Below, in pieces: positions 37,499 through 53,588 of a stretch of DNA of 64,000 nucleotides. Both the position numbers and the translations under genes were made by a program. The notes under the pieces were generated by a model that worked only from the letters and a program-made list of their open reading frames with translations, did no database searches and was not told the origin of the DNA. Source of the DNA: Octopus bimaculoides (taxonomy: Eukaryota); assembly GCF_001194135.2 (NCBI RefSeq), contig NC_068992.1, positions 64,130,528-64,194,527 of the forward strand. Direction: 5' to 3'. The first letter of the stretch is position 1. Every line of letters starts with the position of its first letter.

Positions 37499-37849
37499 TT
37501 AAAAGTATGCACAAAGAATCAATAGAGCCGCCGTCGTTAGAATAAATGTTATAATATGAGCGAACATAAATGTCCTGTCCAGGAACAGAGCAAAGAGCTT
37601 CCATTTGTTTCCAACGGTACTTTCCTTGTAACCGTCGTGTGTAGTGAGATATTGTAGAAATAATTCCAGGGTTTCAATCAGGCCGTCGTGTTCTTTCGTG
37701 TTTGGTTTGTCGTTTTTCTCAATGTTTGATATTCCGTCGTCGTTGTAGTCATCACAGCATTCGCCATCACTGACGAATGAGCTATTGTGGTAAGCTAAAC
37801 CTTCGATTCCTTTACGTCTGTGACAGGAACTTTCTTTCTTGGGGTTAAA
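37499..37849 (-). CDS. Channel exon 7 (cytoplasmic loop, M4, stop)
   Basis: ttctcaag| FNPKKESS...[35 protein letters not shown]; AATAAA 20 nt after the stop (37479-37474). Confidence 0.9.
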   Translation of the reverse strand, partial: FNPKKESSCHRRKGIEGLAYHNSSFVSDGECCDDYNDDGISNIEKNDKPNTKEHDGLIETLELFLQYLTTHDGYKESTVGNKWKLFALFLDRTFMFAHIITFILTTAALLILCAYF

Positions 37850-38431
37850 CTTGAGAAAAAGAAATAAAAATATAGATGAATAGAAGTGAATCAAAATTTA
37901 TTCAATTTCAATGAAATTTATGTAAGAAAAACTTTTATTTTGAATTAATAATATTTTCGTTTTCACTGAGAGGTATATTAAGTAATGGTCTCCTTTGTAT
38001 TCTAGCCAATCACCCAGATCAACCTAATCCTTGTCAGTTAAATTGGGTGGACGGAAACTTATGTAAAAGCCGGTTAGATGGAGTGGAAATGAGATAGCGG
38101 TGACATTGATTCTATGGTGAAGTTCCAGAGGAGTGAGATGTGATCATTTTCAATCACTGGAGGTGGTTTGTGTTCCCACTAGTTTTTATGATGGGGCAGG
38201 TCCAGGTTTTTACAAATTACCCACTGAATATACTGTGCTGCTCTATCATGCCTGTTGCTCTATCATACCCTGTAAGCACAAGAAGACTGCACATGGAGAC
38301 AACGTGATCAATGGCTTCATTTTGTTGTTTACATACATGACATGTTGTGCTACTGCCGTTCTTTAATATGAGAAGTATTAATGCTAGACAAAAGAGGAGT
38401 GGTGATAGAGAGTCACCCTGGAAAAAAAAAA

Positions 38432-38473
<42 letters not shown>

Positions 38474-38489
38474 TAATATTATTATTACT

Positions 38490-38545
<56 letters not shown>

Positions 38546-39705
38546 TATTATTATTATTATTATTATTAAGGCGGCGAGCTGGCAGAAACGTTAGCACGCT
38601 TGGAGAAATGCTTAGCGGTATTTCGTCTGCCGTTATGTTCTGAGTTCAAATTCCGCCGAGGTCGGCTTTGTCTTTCATCCTTTCGGGTTTGATAAATTAA
38701 ATACCAGTTACGCACTGGGGTCGATGTAATCGACTTAATCCCTTTGTCTGTCCTTGTTTGTCCCCTCTATGTTTAGCCCCTTGTGGGCAATAAAGAAATA
38801 AAATCGTTAGCATGCTGGACGAAATGCTTAACGGTATTTTGCCCGTCGATCCGCTACTGGACAAGAATTCTGGATTATTTGTTATATTTACTTTACACGA
38901 TTACGATCTTACGTTCACTTTCAACTCTTTCTCAGTTATCTCCCTTTAGGCTGTTTTCAATATTTTTATTTCCGCTTCTCTATTATTAATTTTACTCACC
39001 TCTCTATCTTAGAAGAAACTGATGGATAAAGAAATCAAACTACATAAACAAACAACAGTAAAACCGTTCAGAAATTAAATACCACTAACATATTTTTATA
39101 ATATATATTATACCTACATATTAACGCTTTACAGTATACTTACATATATACCTATATCTATACATCGATCTAAAACAACAGGAATACTAAAGGAAGTTCG
39201 GAATTTAAGAGAAGAGAAAACCCATAAGATCTTATGCTATTCATTTAAAAATTCCTGAGTAGACCTTATTATTATTACATCCACCTTTAAAACTATTTTG
39301 AATGGTGAATTTGTTAACTTTGGCTTGTATTAGATAAGTATGAACTATTTGTTACTGTTATTAAATTTCCTACAGCCACCTTCACATTTCATGACTACCA
39401 TTGGGATCGATCAGGTACCGGACAAGGATTCTGGAATATTTTTACAGTTTTTTTTACTTAATTTTTTTTGAGTGGTCGGGTTCACTTTTAGTATTCTCGT
39501 ATGTGAGAGCAGTCGAGTTTATTTCAGATATTCTCATTTTAAAAATCATCTCTGGCTAATCGTTGAGAGGATGTTGGTGTTGCTTTGGCAGAGGTTGGCG
39601 CTCTCTGAGTGCTCTTGTTATTATCATTTTAGCCCGGTTACAGCTATATTTCTTCTGAGGTTACATCTCTTATGGATTTGCTGTGTTAAAATCACAATAA
39701 ATTTC

Positions 39706-39743
<38 letters not shown>

Positions 39744-52233: not shown

Positions 52234-52549
52234 AACATGCTGCCTGGCAAGGTAGGCAGTGCCTTCCTTGAATAAAATAGATCGATAGTAATATTTGCCT
52301 TTTATGGCAAAATATGGACCTAATTCAATAAAATTATGAAGGTTACTCTGATTACTATGCATAAAATGTAAAATATTTTATTTTTCTGTAGATTAGGTAG
52401 GCATAATTTGCTCCTGCCTTTCAATCTCAGTATTAAAACTACGCATAGAACTGCTGTAGTACACTGCTGCGTACATTCCTATAACAACATTTTCTTTATA
52501 CACTATGAAGGCAGAAGTAAATCTGAGTAATTACTATTGGCACGTGCCT

Positions 52550-52581
<32 letters not shown>

Positions 52582-53063
52582 CATATACATACATACATAC
52601 AGATGGAGGAAGCGGGTTAAGGAGGGGACAACTTTTGAGAGAGCAGGAATTCTGTATGAAGAATTTAAGCGTGCTGCTGCTCTAAACGGTACGGCTGGTG
52701 TGTGGCGAATGAGGAAAGCCTGGCTTGCAGTGCTTGCAGTCGCGAATACCTGTCAAGAGTGGGGCTCATTAGCCACCAATAAGAACCTCAAATGCAAAAT
52801 ATAAGTTAGTCCCTAGAGGTCAGCAATGGTCTTCCTCAGTCACAAGTGGACAGCCATGATACATACATATATATATATATATATATACATACAGACACAT
52901 GCATACATACATACTTACATACACACATACATACATATATATGTATGTATGTGTATATATGTGTGTGTGTAAGCACCCTGGGCAAGTGTCTTCTACTATA
53001 GCCTCGACCCAACAAAAGCCTTGTGAGTGGATCTGGTAGATGGAAACTGAAAGAAGCCTGTTG

Positions 53064-53102
<39 letters not shown>

Positions 53103-53305
53103 GTCTTTGTGTCTGTGTTTGTCCCCCCCATCCTCACTTGACAACCGATGTTGGTGTGTTTACATTCCTGTAATTTAGCAGTTCAACAAGAGACCGATAG
53201 AATAAGTACTAGGCTTACAAAGAATAAGTCCTGGGGTTCAATTTGTTCAACTAAAGGCAGTGCTCCAGCATGGCCATAGTCAAATCACTGAAACAAATGA
53301 AAGAA

Positions 53306-53345
<40 letters not shown>

Positions 53346-53588
53346 CATATCTACACTCTCGGAGTGGTTGGCATCAGGAAGGGCATCCAGCTGTAGAGGC
53401 TCTATTAATTTTTTTTTTAAAGTGACTTGTATTGGTGATGGGTAGAGTAAATGAAAGGCAGGAGTGAAAAGAGGAGAGGGTGAAAAACATTTTCTCTTAC
53501 CTTCCAGTCCTTCAAATTGTGATCCAAGGAAGATACAAAATAAATAGTAAAAATACCACAGTGGGGTCTTAATGATTGTCTTAGACAT
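37499..53588 (-). CDS. Cys-loop ligand-gated ion channel subunit, atypical nAChR-like (non-alpha; lacks loop C vicinal Cys), ~494 aa, 7 exons
   Basis: Exons (minus) 53588-53501, 50144-50005, 47464-47420, 46002-45893, 43951-43419, 40920-40703 (alternative donor 40694) and 37849-37499. GT..AG introns with matching phases 1,0,0,2,1,0; 1485 nt. Motifs: YYLRP, LRQIIDL, Wx[12 protein letters not shown], Cys-loop [21 protein letters not shown]1 [28 protein letters not shown] (M2), M3, M4 [13 protein letters not shown]. Confidence 0.93.
38568..38810 (+). mobile_element. Family C SINE-like repeat (AAGGCGGCGAGCTGGCAG...TTCTGAGTTCAAATTCC...); representative copy
   Basis: Other copies at about 23180-23640, 26000-26900 (four units), 28150-28350(-), 32545-32945, 35370-35545, 36060-36275(-), 50340-50545; usually begins in an (ATT)n/(ATC)n tract. 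Confidence 0.75.
40703..40920 (-). CDS. Channel exon 6 (M3 and start of cytoplasmic loop)
   Basis: gttctag| (G)[46 protein letters not shown]...THSSR |gtgagc; a second in-frame donor CAG|gtaatt ends at 40694. Confidence 0.88.
41131..42021. mobile_element. Fold-back DNA element with ~230-bp terminal inverted repeats
   Basis: Left AAGGTGGACACCGTTAATCGAAAAG..., right ...CTTTTCGATTAACGGTGCCCACCTT; imperfect arms about 41131-41363 and 41781-42021; GTTAAC-rich subrepeats. Confidence 0.75.
42685..43085. repeat. Decayed 15-bp minisatellite, consensus CACAATGGTGTCCTC
   Basis: About 25 diverged units with 15-nt periodicity in channel intron 5. Confidence 0.65.
43419..43951 (-). CDS. Channel exon 5 (533 bp: Cys-loop, loops B/C, M1, M2)
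   Basis: tatttcag| VDYVLKG...[17 protein letters not shown]...SSWAY...[35 protein letters not shown] |gtaggt. Confidence 0.95.
44068..44283 (+). mobile_element. Related LTR, 3'-truncated
   Basis: TGTAGTAACGCC..GCGCATGCGTAGTC start; shares the TTCTCTTTCTCGC and AATAAA..GGAGTCAGCGTT blocks with 46680-47005. Confidence 0.55.
44284..44702 (+). mobile_element. Penelope-like/retrozyme-type repeat fragment with degenerate hammerhead
   Basis: GACAC-CTGATGA-A-GGCTG(N10)CAGCC-GAAA-T-GTGTT at 44613-44655, with stem III/cleavage triplet deleted. Its 3' tail is identical to the palindrome arm at 33862-33907. Confidence 0.55.
45661..45871. mobile_element. piggyBac-like MITE about 20 bp from the channel exon 4 donor
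   Basis: TTAA at both ends (45657-60, 45872-75); terminal AAAGGG. Confidence 0.65.
45893..46002 (-). CDS. Channel exon 4 (110 bp; absent from ORF track)
   Basis: gctgtag| [36 protein letters not shown](N) |gtaagt. Confidence 0.93.
46150..46480. repeat. ~24-bp minisatellite (TGTGCTGTGTTGTGAGAGGG-type)
   Basis: About 14 diverged units in channel intron 3; related tract at about 47210-47370. Confidence 0.75.
46680..47005 (-). mobile_element. Solo LTR (326 bp) splitting a SINE
   Basis: Starts TGTAGTAACGCC on the minus strand and ends ...CTACTAAA; 4-bp TSD CTCC (46676-79, 47006-09); internal AATAAA; the host SINE resumes exactly after it. Confidence 0.7.
47420..47464 (-). CDS. Channel exon 3 (45 bp; absent from ORF track)
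   Basis: cccatag| [15 protein letters not shown] |gtatgt; size and sequence match the conserved 45-bp nAChR exon. Confidence 0.9.
50005..50144 (-). CDS. Channel exon 2 (140 bp; absent from ORF track)
   Basis: cttacag| [46 protein letters not shown] |gtaacg. Confidence 0.92.
50546..50963. repeat. Compound (TACA)n/(CA)n microsatellite
   Basis: About 420 bp, directly abutting the hammerhead. Confidence 0.9.
50962..51103 (+). ncRNA. Type-I hammerhead ribozyme (intact core, long stem II, palindromic stem III)
   Basis: Stem I ACAAAATCT(50962-70)/AGATTTTGT(51095-103); core CTGAAGA (50971-77); stem II GGCC..GGCC (50978-51082); GAAA (51083-86); C-AGCT-G; cleavage triplet GTA (51092-94). Confidence 0.8.
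53501..53588 (-). CDS. Channel exon 1 (signal peptide)
   Basis: [29 protein letters not shown] + G|GTAAGA phase-1 donor; joins exon 2 to give ...GLEA-ITK. Confidence 0.7.

What the first reader, a model, noticed from the sequence alone, without database searches (positions are those of the whole stretch)
37499..53588. Orphan nAChR-like channel with a stripped ligand-binding loop C: candidate sensory (chemotactile-type) receptor
Seen: intact Cys-loop, loop A Tyr (ALYEN), loop B Trp (SSWAY) and loop D Trp (SIWIR). Loop C reads [17 protein letters not shown], with no vicinal CC and neither canonical Tyr. The pore keeps GEK before M2 (cation-selective signature). At least six N-glycosylation sequons lie in the ectodomain. 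Established: octopus has many atypical AChR-like subunits lacking ACh-binding residues, and some are sucker chemotactile receptors. Inference: either a non-ACh ligand-gated sensory receptor or an accessory non-alpha subunit. Unlike the described tandem clusters, it stands alone in this window.
Basis: partly seen in the sequence, partly recalled or inferred. Interest (0 to 1): 0.78.

Follow-up and report, generated by a model that had tools for sequence, protein, structure and literature searches.

The report
Octopus non-alpha nicotinic receptor subunit gene
This is an intact, conserved octopus gene for a nicotinic-receptor-family channel subunit that has lost its own acetylcholine-binding loop C; it most likely serves as a partner subunit in mixed receptors and is not one of the octopus "taste-by-touch" receptors.

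Summary
A 7-exon minus-strand gene (37499-53588) encodes a 497-aa Cys-loop channel subunit identical to Octopus bimaculoides RefSeq XP_014786697.1 ("nAChR alpha-10 isoform X1"). Both assembly gaps are intronic, and gap-free orthologous loci in O. sinensis and Argonauta have the same seven exons.

The sensory (chemotactile) reading is not supported.
- Chemotactile receptors (CRs) are reported as intronless and tandemly arrayed. This gene is solitary and keeps six ancestral introns, shared with a scallop alpha9-like gene.
- Its nearest relatives are mollusc alpha7/9/10-like subunits with a canonical Y-x-CC loop C. Its sister is one octopus paralog that still has CC (NJ bootstrap 95/100).
- CRT1 is never among its best solved-structure matches; human alpha7 is the best match.

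Only loop C has degenerated: 1 of 12 family-conserved positions is kept. The complementary-face loops, Cys-loop, pre-M1/M1 and M2 are conserved. dN/dS against O. sinensis is 0.28, with no amino-acid change in M1-M3.

Best reading: an octopod-specific, secondarily non-alpha subunit of cation-selective heteromeric receptors. I could not fetch CR sequences, so a direct phylogeny against CRs remains to be done.

The parts
53501..53588 (-). Exon 1 (88 nt): start codon at 53588, signal peptide [29 protein letters not shown], ends in phase 1
   Evidence: identical to XP_014786697.1
51968..52192 (.). Assembly gap inside intron 1 (intron 50145-53500); no coding sequence hidden
   Evidence: gap-free orthologous loci have the same exons
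50005..50144 (-). Exon 2 (140 nt): N-terminal helix and beta1, includes the family-typical RPHC cysteine and sequons N59 and N63
   Evidence: same 140-nt exon in O. sinensis, Argonauta and Pecten
48003..48531 (.). Assembly gap inside intron 2 (intron 47465-50004); no coding sequence hidden
47420..47464 (-). Exon 3 (45 nt): [15 protein letters not shown], loop D with the conserved Trp (W88)
   Evidence: 45-nt exon conserved in Pecten
45893..46002 (-). Exon 4 (110 nt): QWRDC...PDIALYE, loop A Tyr (Y126); the family-typical W-x-D-C cysteine
43419..43951 (-). Exon 5 (533 nt): loop E, Cys-loop (C162-C176, about 43807-43851), loop B Trp (SSWAY 43780-43794), loop F, degenerate loop C (43633-43683), M1, GEK plus M2 (about 43447-43527), M2-M3 loop
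40694..40920 (-). Exon 6 (227 nt): M3 and start of the intracellular loop. An alternative GT donor 9 nt upstream (exon end 40703) gives RefSeq isoform X2 (494 aa, lacks VSQ)
37499..37849 (-). Exon 7 (351 nt): rest of the intracellular loop, MA helix, M4, stop codon
   Evidence: AF2 helix 436-496

Best explanation
The locus is an intact, expressed-type gene for a secondarily non-alpha subunit of the nicotinic (cation-selective Cys-loop) receptor family. It belongs to the lophotrochozoan-expanded alpha7/9/10-like group.

Proposed history (inferred). An alpha-type gene duplicated in the octopod lineage. One copy (XP_014778949) kept the loop C Y-x-CC motif. The other, this gene, lost the vicinal cysteines and both loop C tyrosines before Octopus and Argonauta split.

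Proposed mechanism (inferred). Loop C is the lid of the principal (+) face, so this subunit can no longer form its own agonist site of the nicotinic type. It keeps:
- the complementary (-) face, including the loop D Trp and conserved loop E, F and G positions;
- the Cys-loop, pre-M1 and M2-M3 coupling elements;
- a cation-type pore, with Glu at -1' (GEK) and Leu at 9'.

It would therefore co-assemble with alpha-type subunits. There it would supply the complementary face of their binding sites, or occupy a structural or accessory position as vertebrate beta, alpha5 and beta3 subunits do, and tune conductance and pharmacology. One pore change that could matter is Glu to Gln at 20'.

Shown here: gene integrity, family placement, the loop-specific pattern of loss, purifying selection, and ancestral introns.
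Inferred: heteromeric assembly, the identity of the agonist (acetylcholine or another small amine), and the partner subunits.
For: - Both pLGIC domains are present, and the protein aligns full length with alpha7, beta2 and beta4. The AF2 model has mean pLDDT 78, and its best structural matches are alpha7, alpha4beta2, alpha3beta4 and muscle nAChRs.
- The nearest relatives are mollusc alpha7/9/10-like subunits at 33-40% identity, almost all with Y-x-CC-PEP-YPD in loop C.
- In an NJ tree the query, O. sinensis and Argonauta sequences group at 100/100. This clade joins the single CC-bearing octopus paralog at 95/100.
- Of positions at least 80% conserved in 22 alpha-type relatives, the query keeps 1/12 in loop C. 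It keeps 3/4 in loop D, 3/3 in loop F, 3/3 in loop G, 4/6 in loop E, 6/8 in loop A, 7/9 in the Cys-loop, 12/13 in pre-M1/M1 and 16/18 in M2.
- dN/dS between O. bimaculoides and O. sinensis is 0.28 overall and 0.22 in the ectodomain, with 0 nonsynonymous against 7 synonymous changes in M1-M3.
- Between Octopus and Argonauta, loop C dN is 0.74 against 0.21 for the whole ectodomain. Loop C is therefore the least constrained part.
- With alpha7-identical residues masked, the residual PDB similarity is mainly to non-alpha subunits (beta2, beta4, gamma, epsilon, delta) and 5-HT3A.
- Loss of CC is a recurrent, ordinary event in this family: 43 of 157 relatives lack it.
Against: - There is no functional, expression or assembly data; heteromeric partnership is inferred only by analogy with vertebrate and insect non-alpha subunits.
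- Most CC-less relatives keep at least one loop C tyrosine, whereas this lineage lost both. It also changed loop B (G181S, G187V) and, in Argonauta, the loop A Tyr to Phe. The principal face may be remodelled rather than merely idle.
- Fast loop C evolution could reflect diversifying selection for a new ligand rather than relaxed constraint.
- The tree is neighbour-joining on a limited sample and contains no CR sequences.
Confidence: 0.6

Rival explanations
1. It is a sensory or otherwise non-cholinergic ligand-gated channel that evolved independently of the CRs. The remodelled loop C and loop B would create a new orthosteric pocket, and the subunit would work as a homomer or with its paralog to detect a non-ACh ligand.
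For: - Both loop C tyrosines and the CC pair are gone, loop B is altered, and the loop A Tyr is Phe in Argonauta.
- Loop C evolves much faster than the rest of the ectodomain (dN 0.74 vs 0.21), while the gene as a whole is under purifying selection.
- The lineage is octopod-specific.
- There is precedent for ligand switching in this superfamily: CRs, and DopC dopamine-gated channels related to alpha9/10 (10.1101/2025.04.02.646353; PMC11526382).
Against: - The gene is intron-rich and solitary, unlike CRs (PMC11526382).
- Residues at pocket positions are polar or charged: H223 and S228 in loop C, R143 and R153 in loop E. The CRT1 pocket is described as exceptionally hydrophobic, with Y58, W122, F124 and F192 (10.1101/2025.03.03.641191). 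Mapping CRT1 numbering onto this protein is my inference.
- Loop C differs almost completely between Octopus and Argonauta orthologs, which is unexpected for a lid that recognises a specific ligand.
- The conserved complementary face fits a partner role.
- CRT1 is never among the best PDB matches.
Confidence: 0.2
2. It is a member, or the intron-containing parent lineage, of the cephalopod chemotactile receptor family.
For: - It is an octopus nAChR-like subunit lacking key ACh-binding residues, as CRs are described (PMC10338036).
- CRs must have had an intron-containing nAChR parent, and no direct phylogeny against CR sequences could be run here.
Against: - Six introns sit at positions shared with a scallop homolog, so it cannot descend from the CR retrogene.
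- It is not in a tandem array in this window or in the O. sinensis and Argonauta loci, where the neighbour is a GH9 hydrolase gene.
- Human alpha7 scores 232 bits, while CRT1 falls below the 60th hit (under 183 bits) for the full length. CRT1 also falls below the 60th hit for M1-M3 and is absent after alpha7-masking.
- Loop C is only 2 residues shorter than in alpha-type relatives, whereas CRT1 loop C is described as short (PMC11536092).
- Its sister gene is a CC-bearing alpha-type subunit.
Confidence: 0.05
3. It is a dopamine- or monoamine-gated cation channel subunit of the DopC type, or a silent DopC2-like partner.
For: - RefSeq names it alpha-10-like, and DopC channels are the invertebrate relatives of vertebrate alpha9/10.
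- An O. vulgaris DopC2 did not form functional homomers (10.1101/2025.04.02.646353).
Against: - DopC channels retain the Y-x-CC motif and both loop C tyrosines (10.1101/2025.10.31.685654); this protein has neither.
- DopC1 has direct orthologs across Bilateria. This gene has none outside octopods above about 40% identity.
- Gene identifiers could not be cross-matched.
Confidence: 0.05
4. It is a decaying or non-functional duplicate.
For: Loss of the canonical agonist-binding loop C.
Against: - The ORF is intact with canonical splice sites in three octopods that are saturated at synonymous sites (dS above 2).
- dN/dS is 0.28 against O. sinensis and about 0.1 against Argonauta, and M1-M3 is invariant between the Octopus species.
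Confidence: 0.03

Closest known systems
Lophotrochozoan-expanded alpha7/alpha9/alpha10-like nAChR subunits (e.g. Pecten maximus XP_033749536, Aplysia alpha-7-like; the 'Alpha-A10' type clades of PMC13174522; the expansion described in PMC6896357)
   Same: - They are the best sequence matches, at 33-40% identity over the full length.
- The seven-exon gene structure is identical, with 140-, 45- and 110-nt exons.
- They share the family-typical RPxC and WxDC cysteines.
- They share the GEKVS...TVLLSL M2.
   Different: - The relatives are almost all alpha-type (Y-x-CC-PEP-YPD); this lineage lost the CC pair and both tyrosines.
- 20' is Gln rather than Glu, and 4' is Gly rather than Glu.
Its octopus paralog XP_014778949 / A0A0L8GQC0 (O. 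sinensis XP_029643728)
   Same: - It is the sister gene (NJ bootstrap 95/100).
- Identity is 43% over 306 aligned tree columns and 49% in the best-matching ectodomain stretch.
- Both share the [14 protein letters not shown]-type segment after loop A.
- In O. sinensis it lies on the same chromosome.
   Different: - The paralog retains Y-S-CC in loop C and keeps 5/12 conserved loop C positions.
- It lies 18 Mb away, so it is not a tandem copy.
Vertebrate non-alpha nAChR subunits (beta2, beta4; accessory alpha5/beta3; muscle beta, gamma, delta, epsilon)
   Same: - No functional principal-face loop C, while the loop D Trp, loop A Tyr, loop B Trp and cation pore are retained.
- beta2 and beta4 rank among the top PDB hits.
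- Non-alpha subunits dominate after alpha7 identities are masked.
   Different: - The origin is independent: the loss of CC here happened inside a mollusc alpha-type clade.
- The residue two before the loop B Trp is Ser, not the Arg of beta subunits (10.1101/2025.10.31.685654).
Cephalopod chemotactile receptors (CRT1, PDB 8EIS, UniProt A0A0L8FVQ9; squid CRB1)
   Same: - Both are octopus nAChR-family channels lacking canonical ACh-binding residues.
- Both have a cation-type pore.
   Different: - CRs are intronless, tandemly arrayed and sucker-enriched. They have a short loop C and a strongly hydrophobic pocket, and they work as ligand-gated homo- or heteromers for greasy ligands (PMC11526382; PMC13174522; PMC11536092; 10.1101/2025.03.03.641191).
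- This gene has six ancestral introns, is solitary, has a near-full-length polar loop C, and is much more alpha7-like than CRT1-like.
DopC dopamine-gated cation channels (O. vulgaris DopC1 LOC115218923, DopC2 LOC115215511)
   Same: Both are invertebrate relatives of alpha9/alpha10-type subunits. DopC2 is silent as a homomer (10.1101/2025.04.02.646353).
   Different: DopC channels keep the YXCC motif and the tyrosine pair and have pan-bilaterian orthologs (10.1101/2025.10.31.685654). This gene has neither property.

Membership tests
[quoted passage not shown] | Neur_chan_LBD ectodomain followed by a four-helix Neur_chan_memb domain | tested here: met
   Pfam PF02931 E=2.6e-52 and PF02932 E=2.1e-35. 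The AF2 model shows a beta-sandwich plus M1-M4 helices.
[quoted passage not shown] | Cys-loop: two cysteines 13 residues apart with an FPFD core | tested here: met
   C162[14 protein letters not shown]176; invariant in the family alignment.
Cation-selective nicotinic-type branch | Glu at -1' (GEK) before M2, no Pro-Ala-Arg anion motif, Leu at 9' | tested here: met
   [19 protein letters not shown]. 20' is Gln instead of Glu.
nAChR alpha subunit | Vicinal Cys-Cys in loop C, with flanking tyrosines (YxCC...Y) | tested here: not met
   Loop C is [16 protein letters not shown], with no CC and neither Tyr. The RefSeq name 'alpha-10' is therefore a similarity label only.
nAChR non-alpha (complementary or structural) subunit | Lacks loop C CC but retains complementary-face elements (loop D Trp etc.) and an intact pore and gating interface | tested here: met
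   W88 is retained. Conserved positions kept: loop D 3/4, loop F 3/3, loop G 3/3, Cys-loop 7/9, pre-M1/M1 12/13, M2 16/18, against loop C 1/12.
nAChR non-alpha (complementary or structural) subunit | Functions only in heteromers with alpha-type subunits | not testable with these tools
   Requires co-expression electrophysiology or biochemistry.
Lophotrochozoan alpha7/9/10-like expanded clade | Groups with these subunits in similarity searches and trees; shared gene structure and clade-typical RPxC/WxDC cysteines | tested here: met
Cephalopod chemotactile receptors (CRs) | Intronless coding sequence (retrogene origin) | tested here: not met
   There are six introns, with exon lengths conserved in O. 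sinensis and Argonauta and junction positions shared with Pecten. The feature is taken from PMC11526382 and PMC13174522.
Cephalopod chemotactile receptors (CRs) | Tandem clustering with other CR genes | tested here: not met
   There is no other pLGIC sequence in the 64-kb window. The downstream neighbour in O. sinensis and Argonauta is a GH9 gene. The only close paralog is 18 Mb away.
Cephalopod chemotactile receptors (CRs) | Membership of the CR clade in a phylogeny | not tested
   No CR sequence could be retrieved. Indirect evidence is against membership: CRT1 (8EIS) is absent from the top 60 PDB sequence hits and the top 50 Foldseek hits, while alpha7 is the best hit.
Cephalopod chemotactile receptors (CRs) | Hydrophobic orthosteric pocket; short loop C | tested here: inconclusive
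   Pocket-position residues here are polar or charged (H223, S228, R143, R153), and loop C is only 2 residues shorter than in alpha-type relatives. Equivalence to CRT1 Y58/W122/F124/F192 is inferred, not aligned.
Cephalopod chemotactile receptors (CRs) | Sucker sensory-epithelium expression and activation by poorly soluble ligands | not testable with these tools
   Needs RNA-seq or in situ data and electrophysiology.
DopC dopamine-gated cation channels | Retained YXCC motif and loop C tyrosine pair; direct orthologs across Bilateria | tested here: not met
   Neither is present. The features are taken from 10.1101/2025.10.31.685654 and 10.1101/2025.04.02.646353.

The most novel reading that the evidence does not exclude
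An octopod-specific subunit, born from an alpha9/10-like nicotinic gene by ordinary DNA-level duplication rather than retroposition, has rebuilt its loop B and loop C pocket to recognise a non-cholinergic ligand. That would be a second, independent route from neurotransmitter receptor to novel chemoreceptor in octopuses, parallel to the CRs.
Probability: 0.15. Interest if true: 0.65.

Novelty: new member of a known kind. Interest (0 to 1): 0.28.

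Why it matters
As it stands, this is one of the roughly 78 nAChR-family genes of O. bimaculoides (PMC6896357). It is a clean example of how a non-alpha subunit arises from an alpha-type ancestor: loop C alone degenerates, while the complementary face, gating interface and pore stay under selection.

Practical value:
- It corrects a misleading RefSeq name ('alpha-10').
- It supplies full-length gene models for the truncated Argonauta annotation.
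- It nominates a testable partner pair, this subunit plus its CC-bearing paralog XP_014778949, for reconstituting octopus heteromeric receptors.

It would matter more if the subunit turned out to gate on a non-cholinergic ligand.

Tried and rejected
1. Large homolog searches. Full-length and ectodomain queries timed out twice. A 124-aa query returned nothing. The search by protein id worked.

2. My alternative splice 'model B' (483 aa) is not in the database and rested on a mis-parsed donor. The real alternative is RefSeq isoform X2, which uses a donor 9 nt upstream.

3. Retrieving real CR sequences for a phylogeny failed by every route tried.
- The primary CR papers are not held.
- No held supplement lists CR sequences or identifiers.
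- The Courtney et al. alignment supplement is untrimmed and truncated to about 40 sequences, and does not contain the query motifs.
- PDB searches never brought CRT1 or CRB1 into the printed hits. I tried the full length, M1-M3 only, the alpha7-masked query and a divergent relative.
- Foldseek did not bring them up either.
- I ran no further search on this, because word-index sensitivity made success unlikely.

4. DopC identity was considered and rejected on the YXCC criterion.

5. Pseudogene status was rejected on dN/dS.

6. P0043 first looked like a third octopus paralog. It is another gene model of the same paralog as P0156.

7. No ML tree software was available, so the tree is neighbour-joining with 100 bootstraps.

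Full report
**What is there.** The finding's coordinates match a minus-strand gene of seven exons exactly: 53501-53588, 50005-50144, 47420-47464, 45893-46002, 43419-43951, 40694-40920 and 37499-37849. Every junction is a canonical AG/GT site and the phases are consistent. The 497-aa product is identical to RefSeq XP_014786697.1, "neuronal acetylcholine receptor subunit alpha-10 isoform X1" of Octopus bimaculoides. Isoform X2 uses a second GT donor 9 nt upstream in exon 6. The protein carries both pLGIC Pfam domains, with E-values of 2.6e-52 and 2.1e-35. The AlphaFold2 model is confident outside the intracellular loop (mean pLDDT 78).

**The gaps, tested first.** The N runs at 51968-52192 and 48003-48531 lie in introns 1 and 2. 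Three results show they hide no exon.
- The protein aligns to human alpha7 without a break across the exon 1/2/3 junctions.
- The O. sinensis ortholog has no N inside the gene, and the Argonauta hians locus has no N at all. Both have exons of 88, 140, 45, 110, 533 and 227 nt, with a last exon of 339 or 351 nt.
- The window is colinear with the O. sinensis locus on both sides of each gap.

All are present.
- Cys-loop C162-C176.
- Loop A ALYE|N, split by intron 4.
- Loop B SSWAY.
- Loop D SIWIR.
- GEK before M2.
- Six ectodomain sequons.
- A loop C ([16 protein letters not shown]) with no vicinal cysteines and neither tyrosine.

Only four of the sequons are conserved among the three octopods. 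Relatives carry 1-5 sequons, so six is at the high end but unremarkable. No other pLGIC-like sequence exists in the 64-kb window.

**Relatives.** A search of 1.84 billion representative proteins found one close relative, from Argonauta at 67% identity. Apart from octopus fragments of the same gene, everything else is at or below about 49% identity. Named hits:
- Orthologs in O. sinensis (over 90%), O. vulgaris and Argonauta.
- One octopus paralog, XP_014778949 / A0A0L8GQC0 in O. bimaculoides and XP_029643728 in O. sinensis.
- Bivalve, gastropod and brachiopod "alpha-7/9/10-like" subunits at 30-40% identity.

Almost all of these relatives have a textbook alpha-type loop C, Y-x-CC-PEP-YPDVTF. 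The paralog has Y-S-CC. In a neighbour-joining tree of 148 sequences, the three octopod orthologs group at 100/100, and this clade joins the paralog at 95/100. In O. sinensis the paralog lies on the same chromosome, 18 Mb away. The lineage is therefore a secondarily "de-alpha-ized" copy of an alpha-type gene, and the loss predates the split of Octopus and Argonauta. Losing the CC pair is common in this family: 43 of 157 relatives lack it. Most of those still keep a loop C tyrosine, though.

**Pattern of change.** I took positions at least 80% conserved in 22 alpha-type relatives and counted how many the query keeps:

| Region | Conserved positions kept |
|---|---|
| Loop C | 1/12 |
| Loop B | 3/6 |
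| Loop A | 6/8 |
| Loop D | 3/4 |
| Loop E | 4/6 |
| Loop F | 3/3 |
| Loop G | 3/3 |
| Cys-loop | 7/9 |
| Pre-M1/M1 | 12/13 |
| M2 | 16/18 |

The pore has Glu at -1' and Leu at 9'. Position 20' is Gln rather than the family's Glu.

Selection is purifying (all values):
- dN/dS between O. bimaculoides and O. sinensis is 0.28 overall and 0.22 in the ectodomain.
- M1-M3 has no amino-acid change against seven synonymous ones.
- dN/dS against Argonauta is about 0.1, although synonymous sites are saturated.
- Loop C is the exception. Its dN between Octopus and Argonauta is 0.74, against 0.21 for the whole ectodomain.
- Argonauta has also replaced the loop A Tyr with Phe.

So the principal-face lid is unconstrained or changing, while everything needed to fold, assemble, couple and conduct cations is held fixed.

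**Is it a chemotactile receptor?** The held literature describes CRs as intronless, tandemly arrayed derivatives of a retroposed nAChR gene. They have a hydrophobic pocket, a short loop C and enrichment in suckers (PMC11526382; PMC13174522; PMC11536092; 10.1101/2025.03.03.641191). This gene differs on each point I could test.
- It has six introns. Its exon lengths are conserved across Octopoda, and its junction positions match those of a Pecten maximus alpha9-like gene (IIEL|NEP, LRW|NW-DC, LYD|N, PYIG|VYF). From memory, the 140-, 45- and 110-nt exons also match exons 2-4 of human CHRNA7; that is a lead, not a test made here. A gene that keeps ancestral introns cannot descend from a retrocopy.
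- It is solitary in the window. In O. sinensis and Argonauta its neighbour is a GH9 hydrolase gene.
- Human alpha7 is its best solved relative, at 232 bits for the full length and 86 bits for M1-M3. CRT1 entries (8EIS and later) never reach the top 60 sequence hits or the top 50 structural hits. CRT1 also does not appear after masking all alpha7-identical residues; that query instead recovers beta2, beta4, gamma, epsilon and 5-HT3A.

This is the main gap in the analysis.

**Is it a DopC-type channel?** Dopamine-gated cation channels related to alpha9/10 exist in octopus (10.1101/2025.04.02.646353). They retain YXCC and both tyrosines (10.1101/2025.10.31.685654) and have orthologs across Bilateria. 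This gene has neither property.

**Mechanism proposed.** The most economical reading is a non-alpha subunit that co-assembles with alpha-type subunits. It would lend its conserved complementary face or take a structural position, and it would modify channel properties. This is the role vertebrate beta, alpha5 and beta3 subunits play, but here it arose independently inside a mollusc alpha-type clade. I give this 0.6. The main rival, at about 0.2, is that the altered loops B and C form a new pocket for a non-cholinergic ligand. Membership or parentage of the CR family, DopC identity and pseudogene status are each at or below 0.05.

**Verdict.** The sensory interpretation is not supported, and the "accessory non-alpha subunit" alternative is. 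This is a new member of a known kind, already present as a RefSeq prediction under a misleading "alpha-10" name. Interest is modest.

Noticed in passing
window 23708-24028 (+ strand): A stop-free segment encodes a glycoside hydrolase family 9 C-terminal signature (…[33 protein letters not shown]…). A GH9 gene is the tail-to-tail neighbour of the receptor gene in both O. sinensis (L002) and Argonauta (L001), so synteny is conserved across octopods. The family assignment rests on the neighbour annotation and my reading of the motif; I did not run Pfam on the window segment itself.
   Followed up: partly
L001 8427-10003 (Argonauta hians BAAFZT010000048.1): The Argonauta annotation GAB1606007.1 (407 aa) is truncated at the 5' end. 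Exons 1-3 (88, 140 and 45 nt) lie upstream of the called gene and restore a full-length 497-aa protein. The Argonauta gene is compact, about 5.7 kb against 16 kb in O. bimaculoides.
   Followed up: yes
window 40694-40703 (- strand): Two in-frame GT donors 9 nt apart at the end of exon 6 (AGG|GTGAGCCAG|GTAATT) account for RefSeq isoforms X1 and X2, which differ by the tripeptide VSQ in the intracellular loop.
   Followed up: yes
window 761-945, 10993-11170, 13311-13501, 21920-22120, 49395-49597, 56341-56543, 58901-59087: There are multiple copies of an interspersed repeat of about 190 bp, also present several times in the O. sinensis locus. A second repeat family lies at about 23391-23566, 28180-28347, 32545-32760, 35348-35500, 36107-36272 and 38568-38800. 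They look like SINE-type elements but were not classified.
   Followed up: no
window-wide, e.g. 27300-27940, 50400-51020, 54400-56100: Long microsatellite and low-complexity tracts (TG/CA, TA, AAT/ATT, CT) produce long spurious open reading frames. Most of the 14 assembly gaps abut such tracts.
   Followed up: no
L003 (O. sinensis CM016870.1:68.62-68.70 Mb) and proteins P0018, P0156, P0043: The CC-bearing paralog has only truncated or conflicting gene models (310-375 aa, ending after M2 or with an odd insertion before M3), spread over a gene range of about 64 kb. Its true full-length structure is unresolved.
   Followed up: partly
protein residues 56 and 96 (window exon 2 and exon 4): Two extra cysteines, RPxC and WxDC, are conserved in nearly all mollusc alpha7/9/10-like relatives but absent from human alpha7. 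They may form a clade-specific ectodomain disulfide. I did not check this in the model.
   Followed up: no
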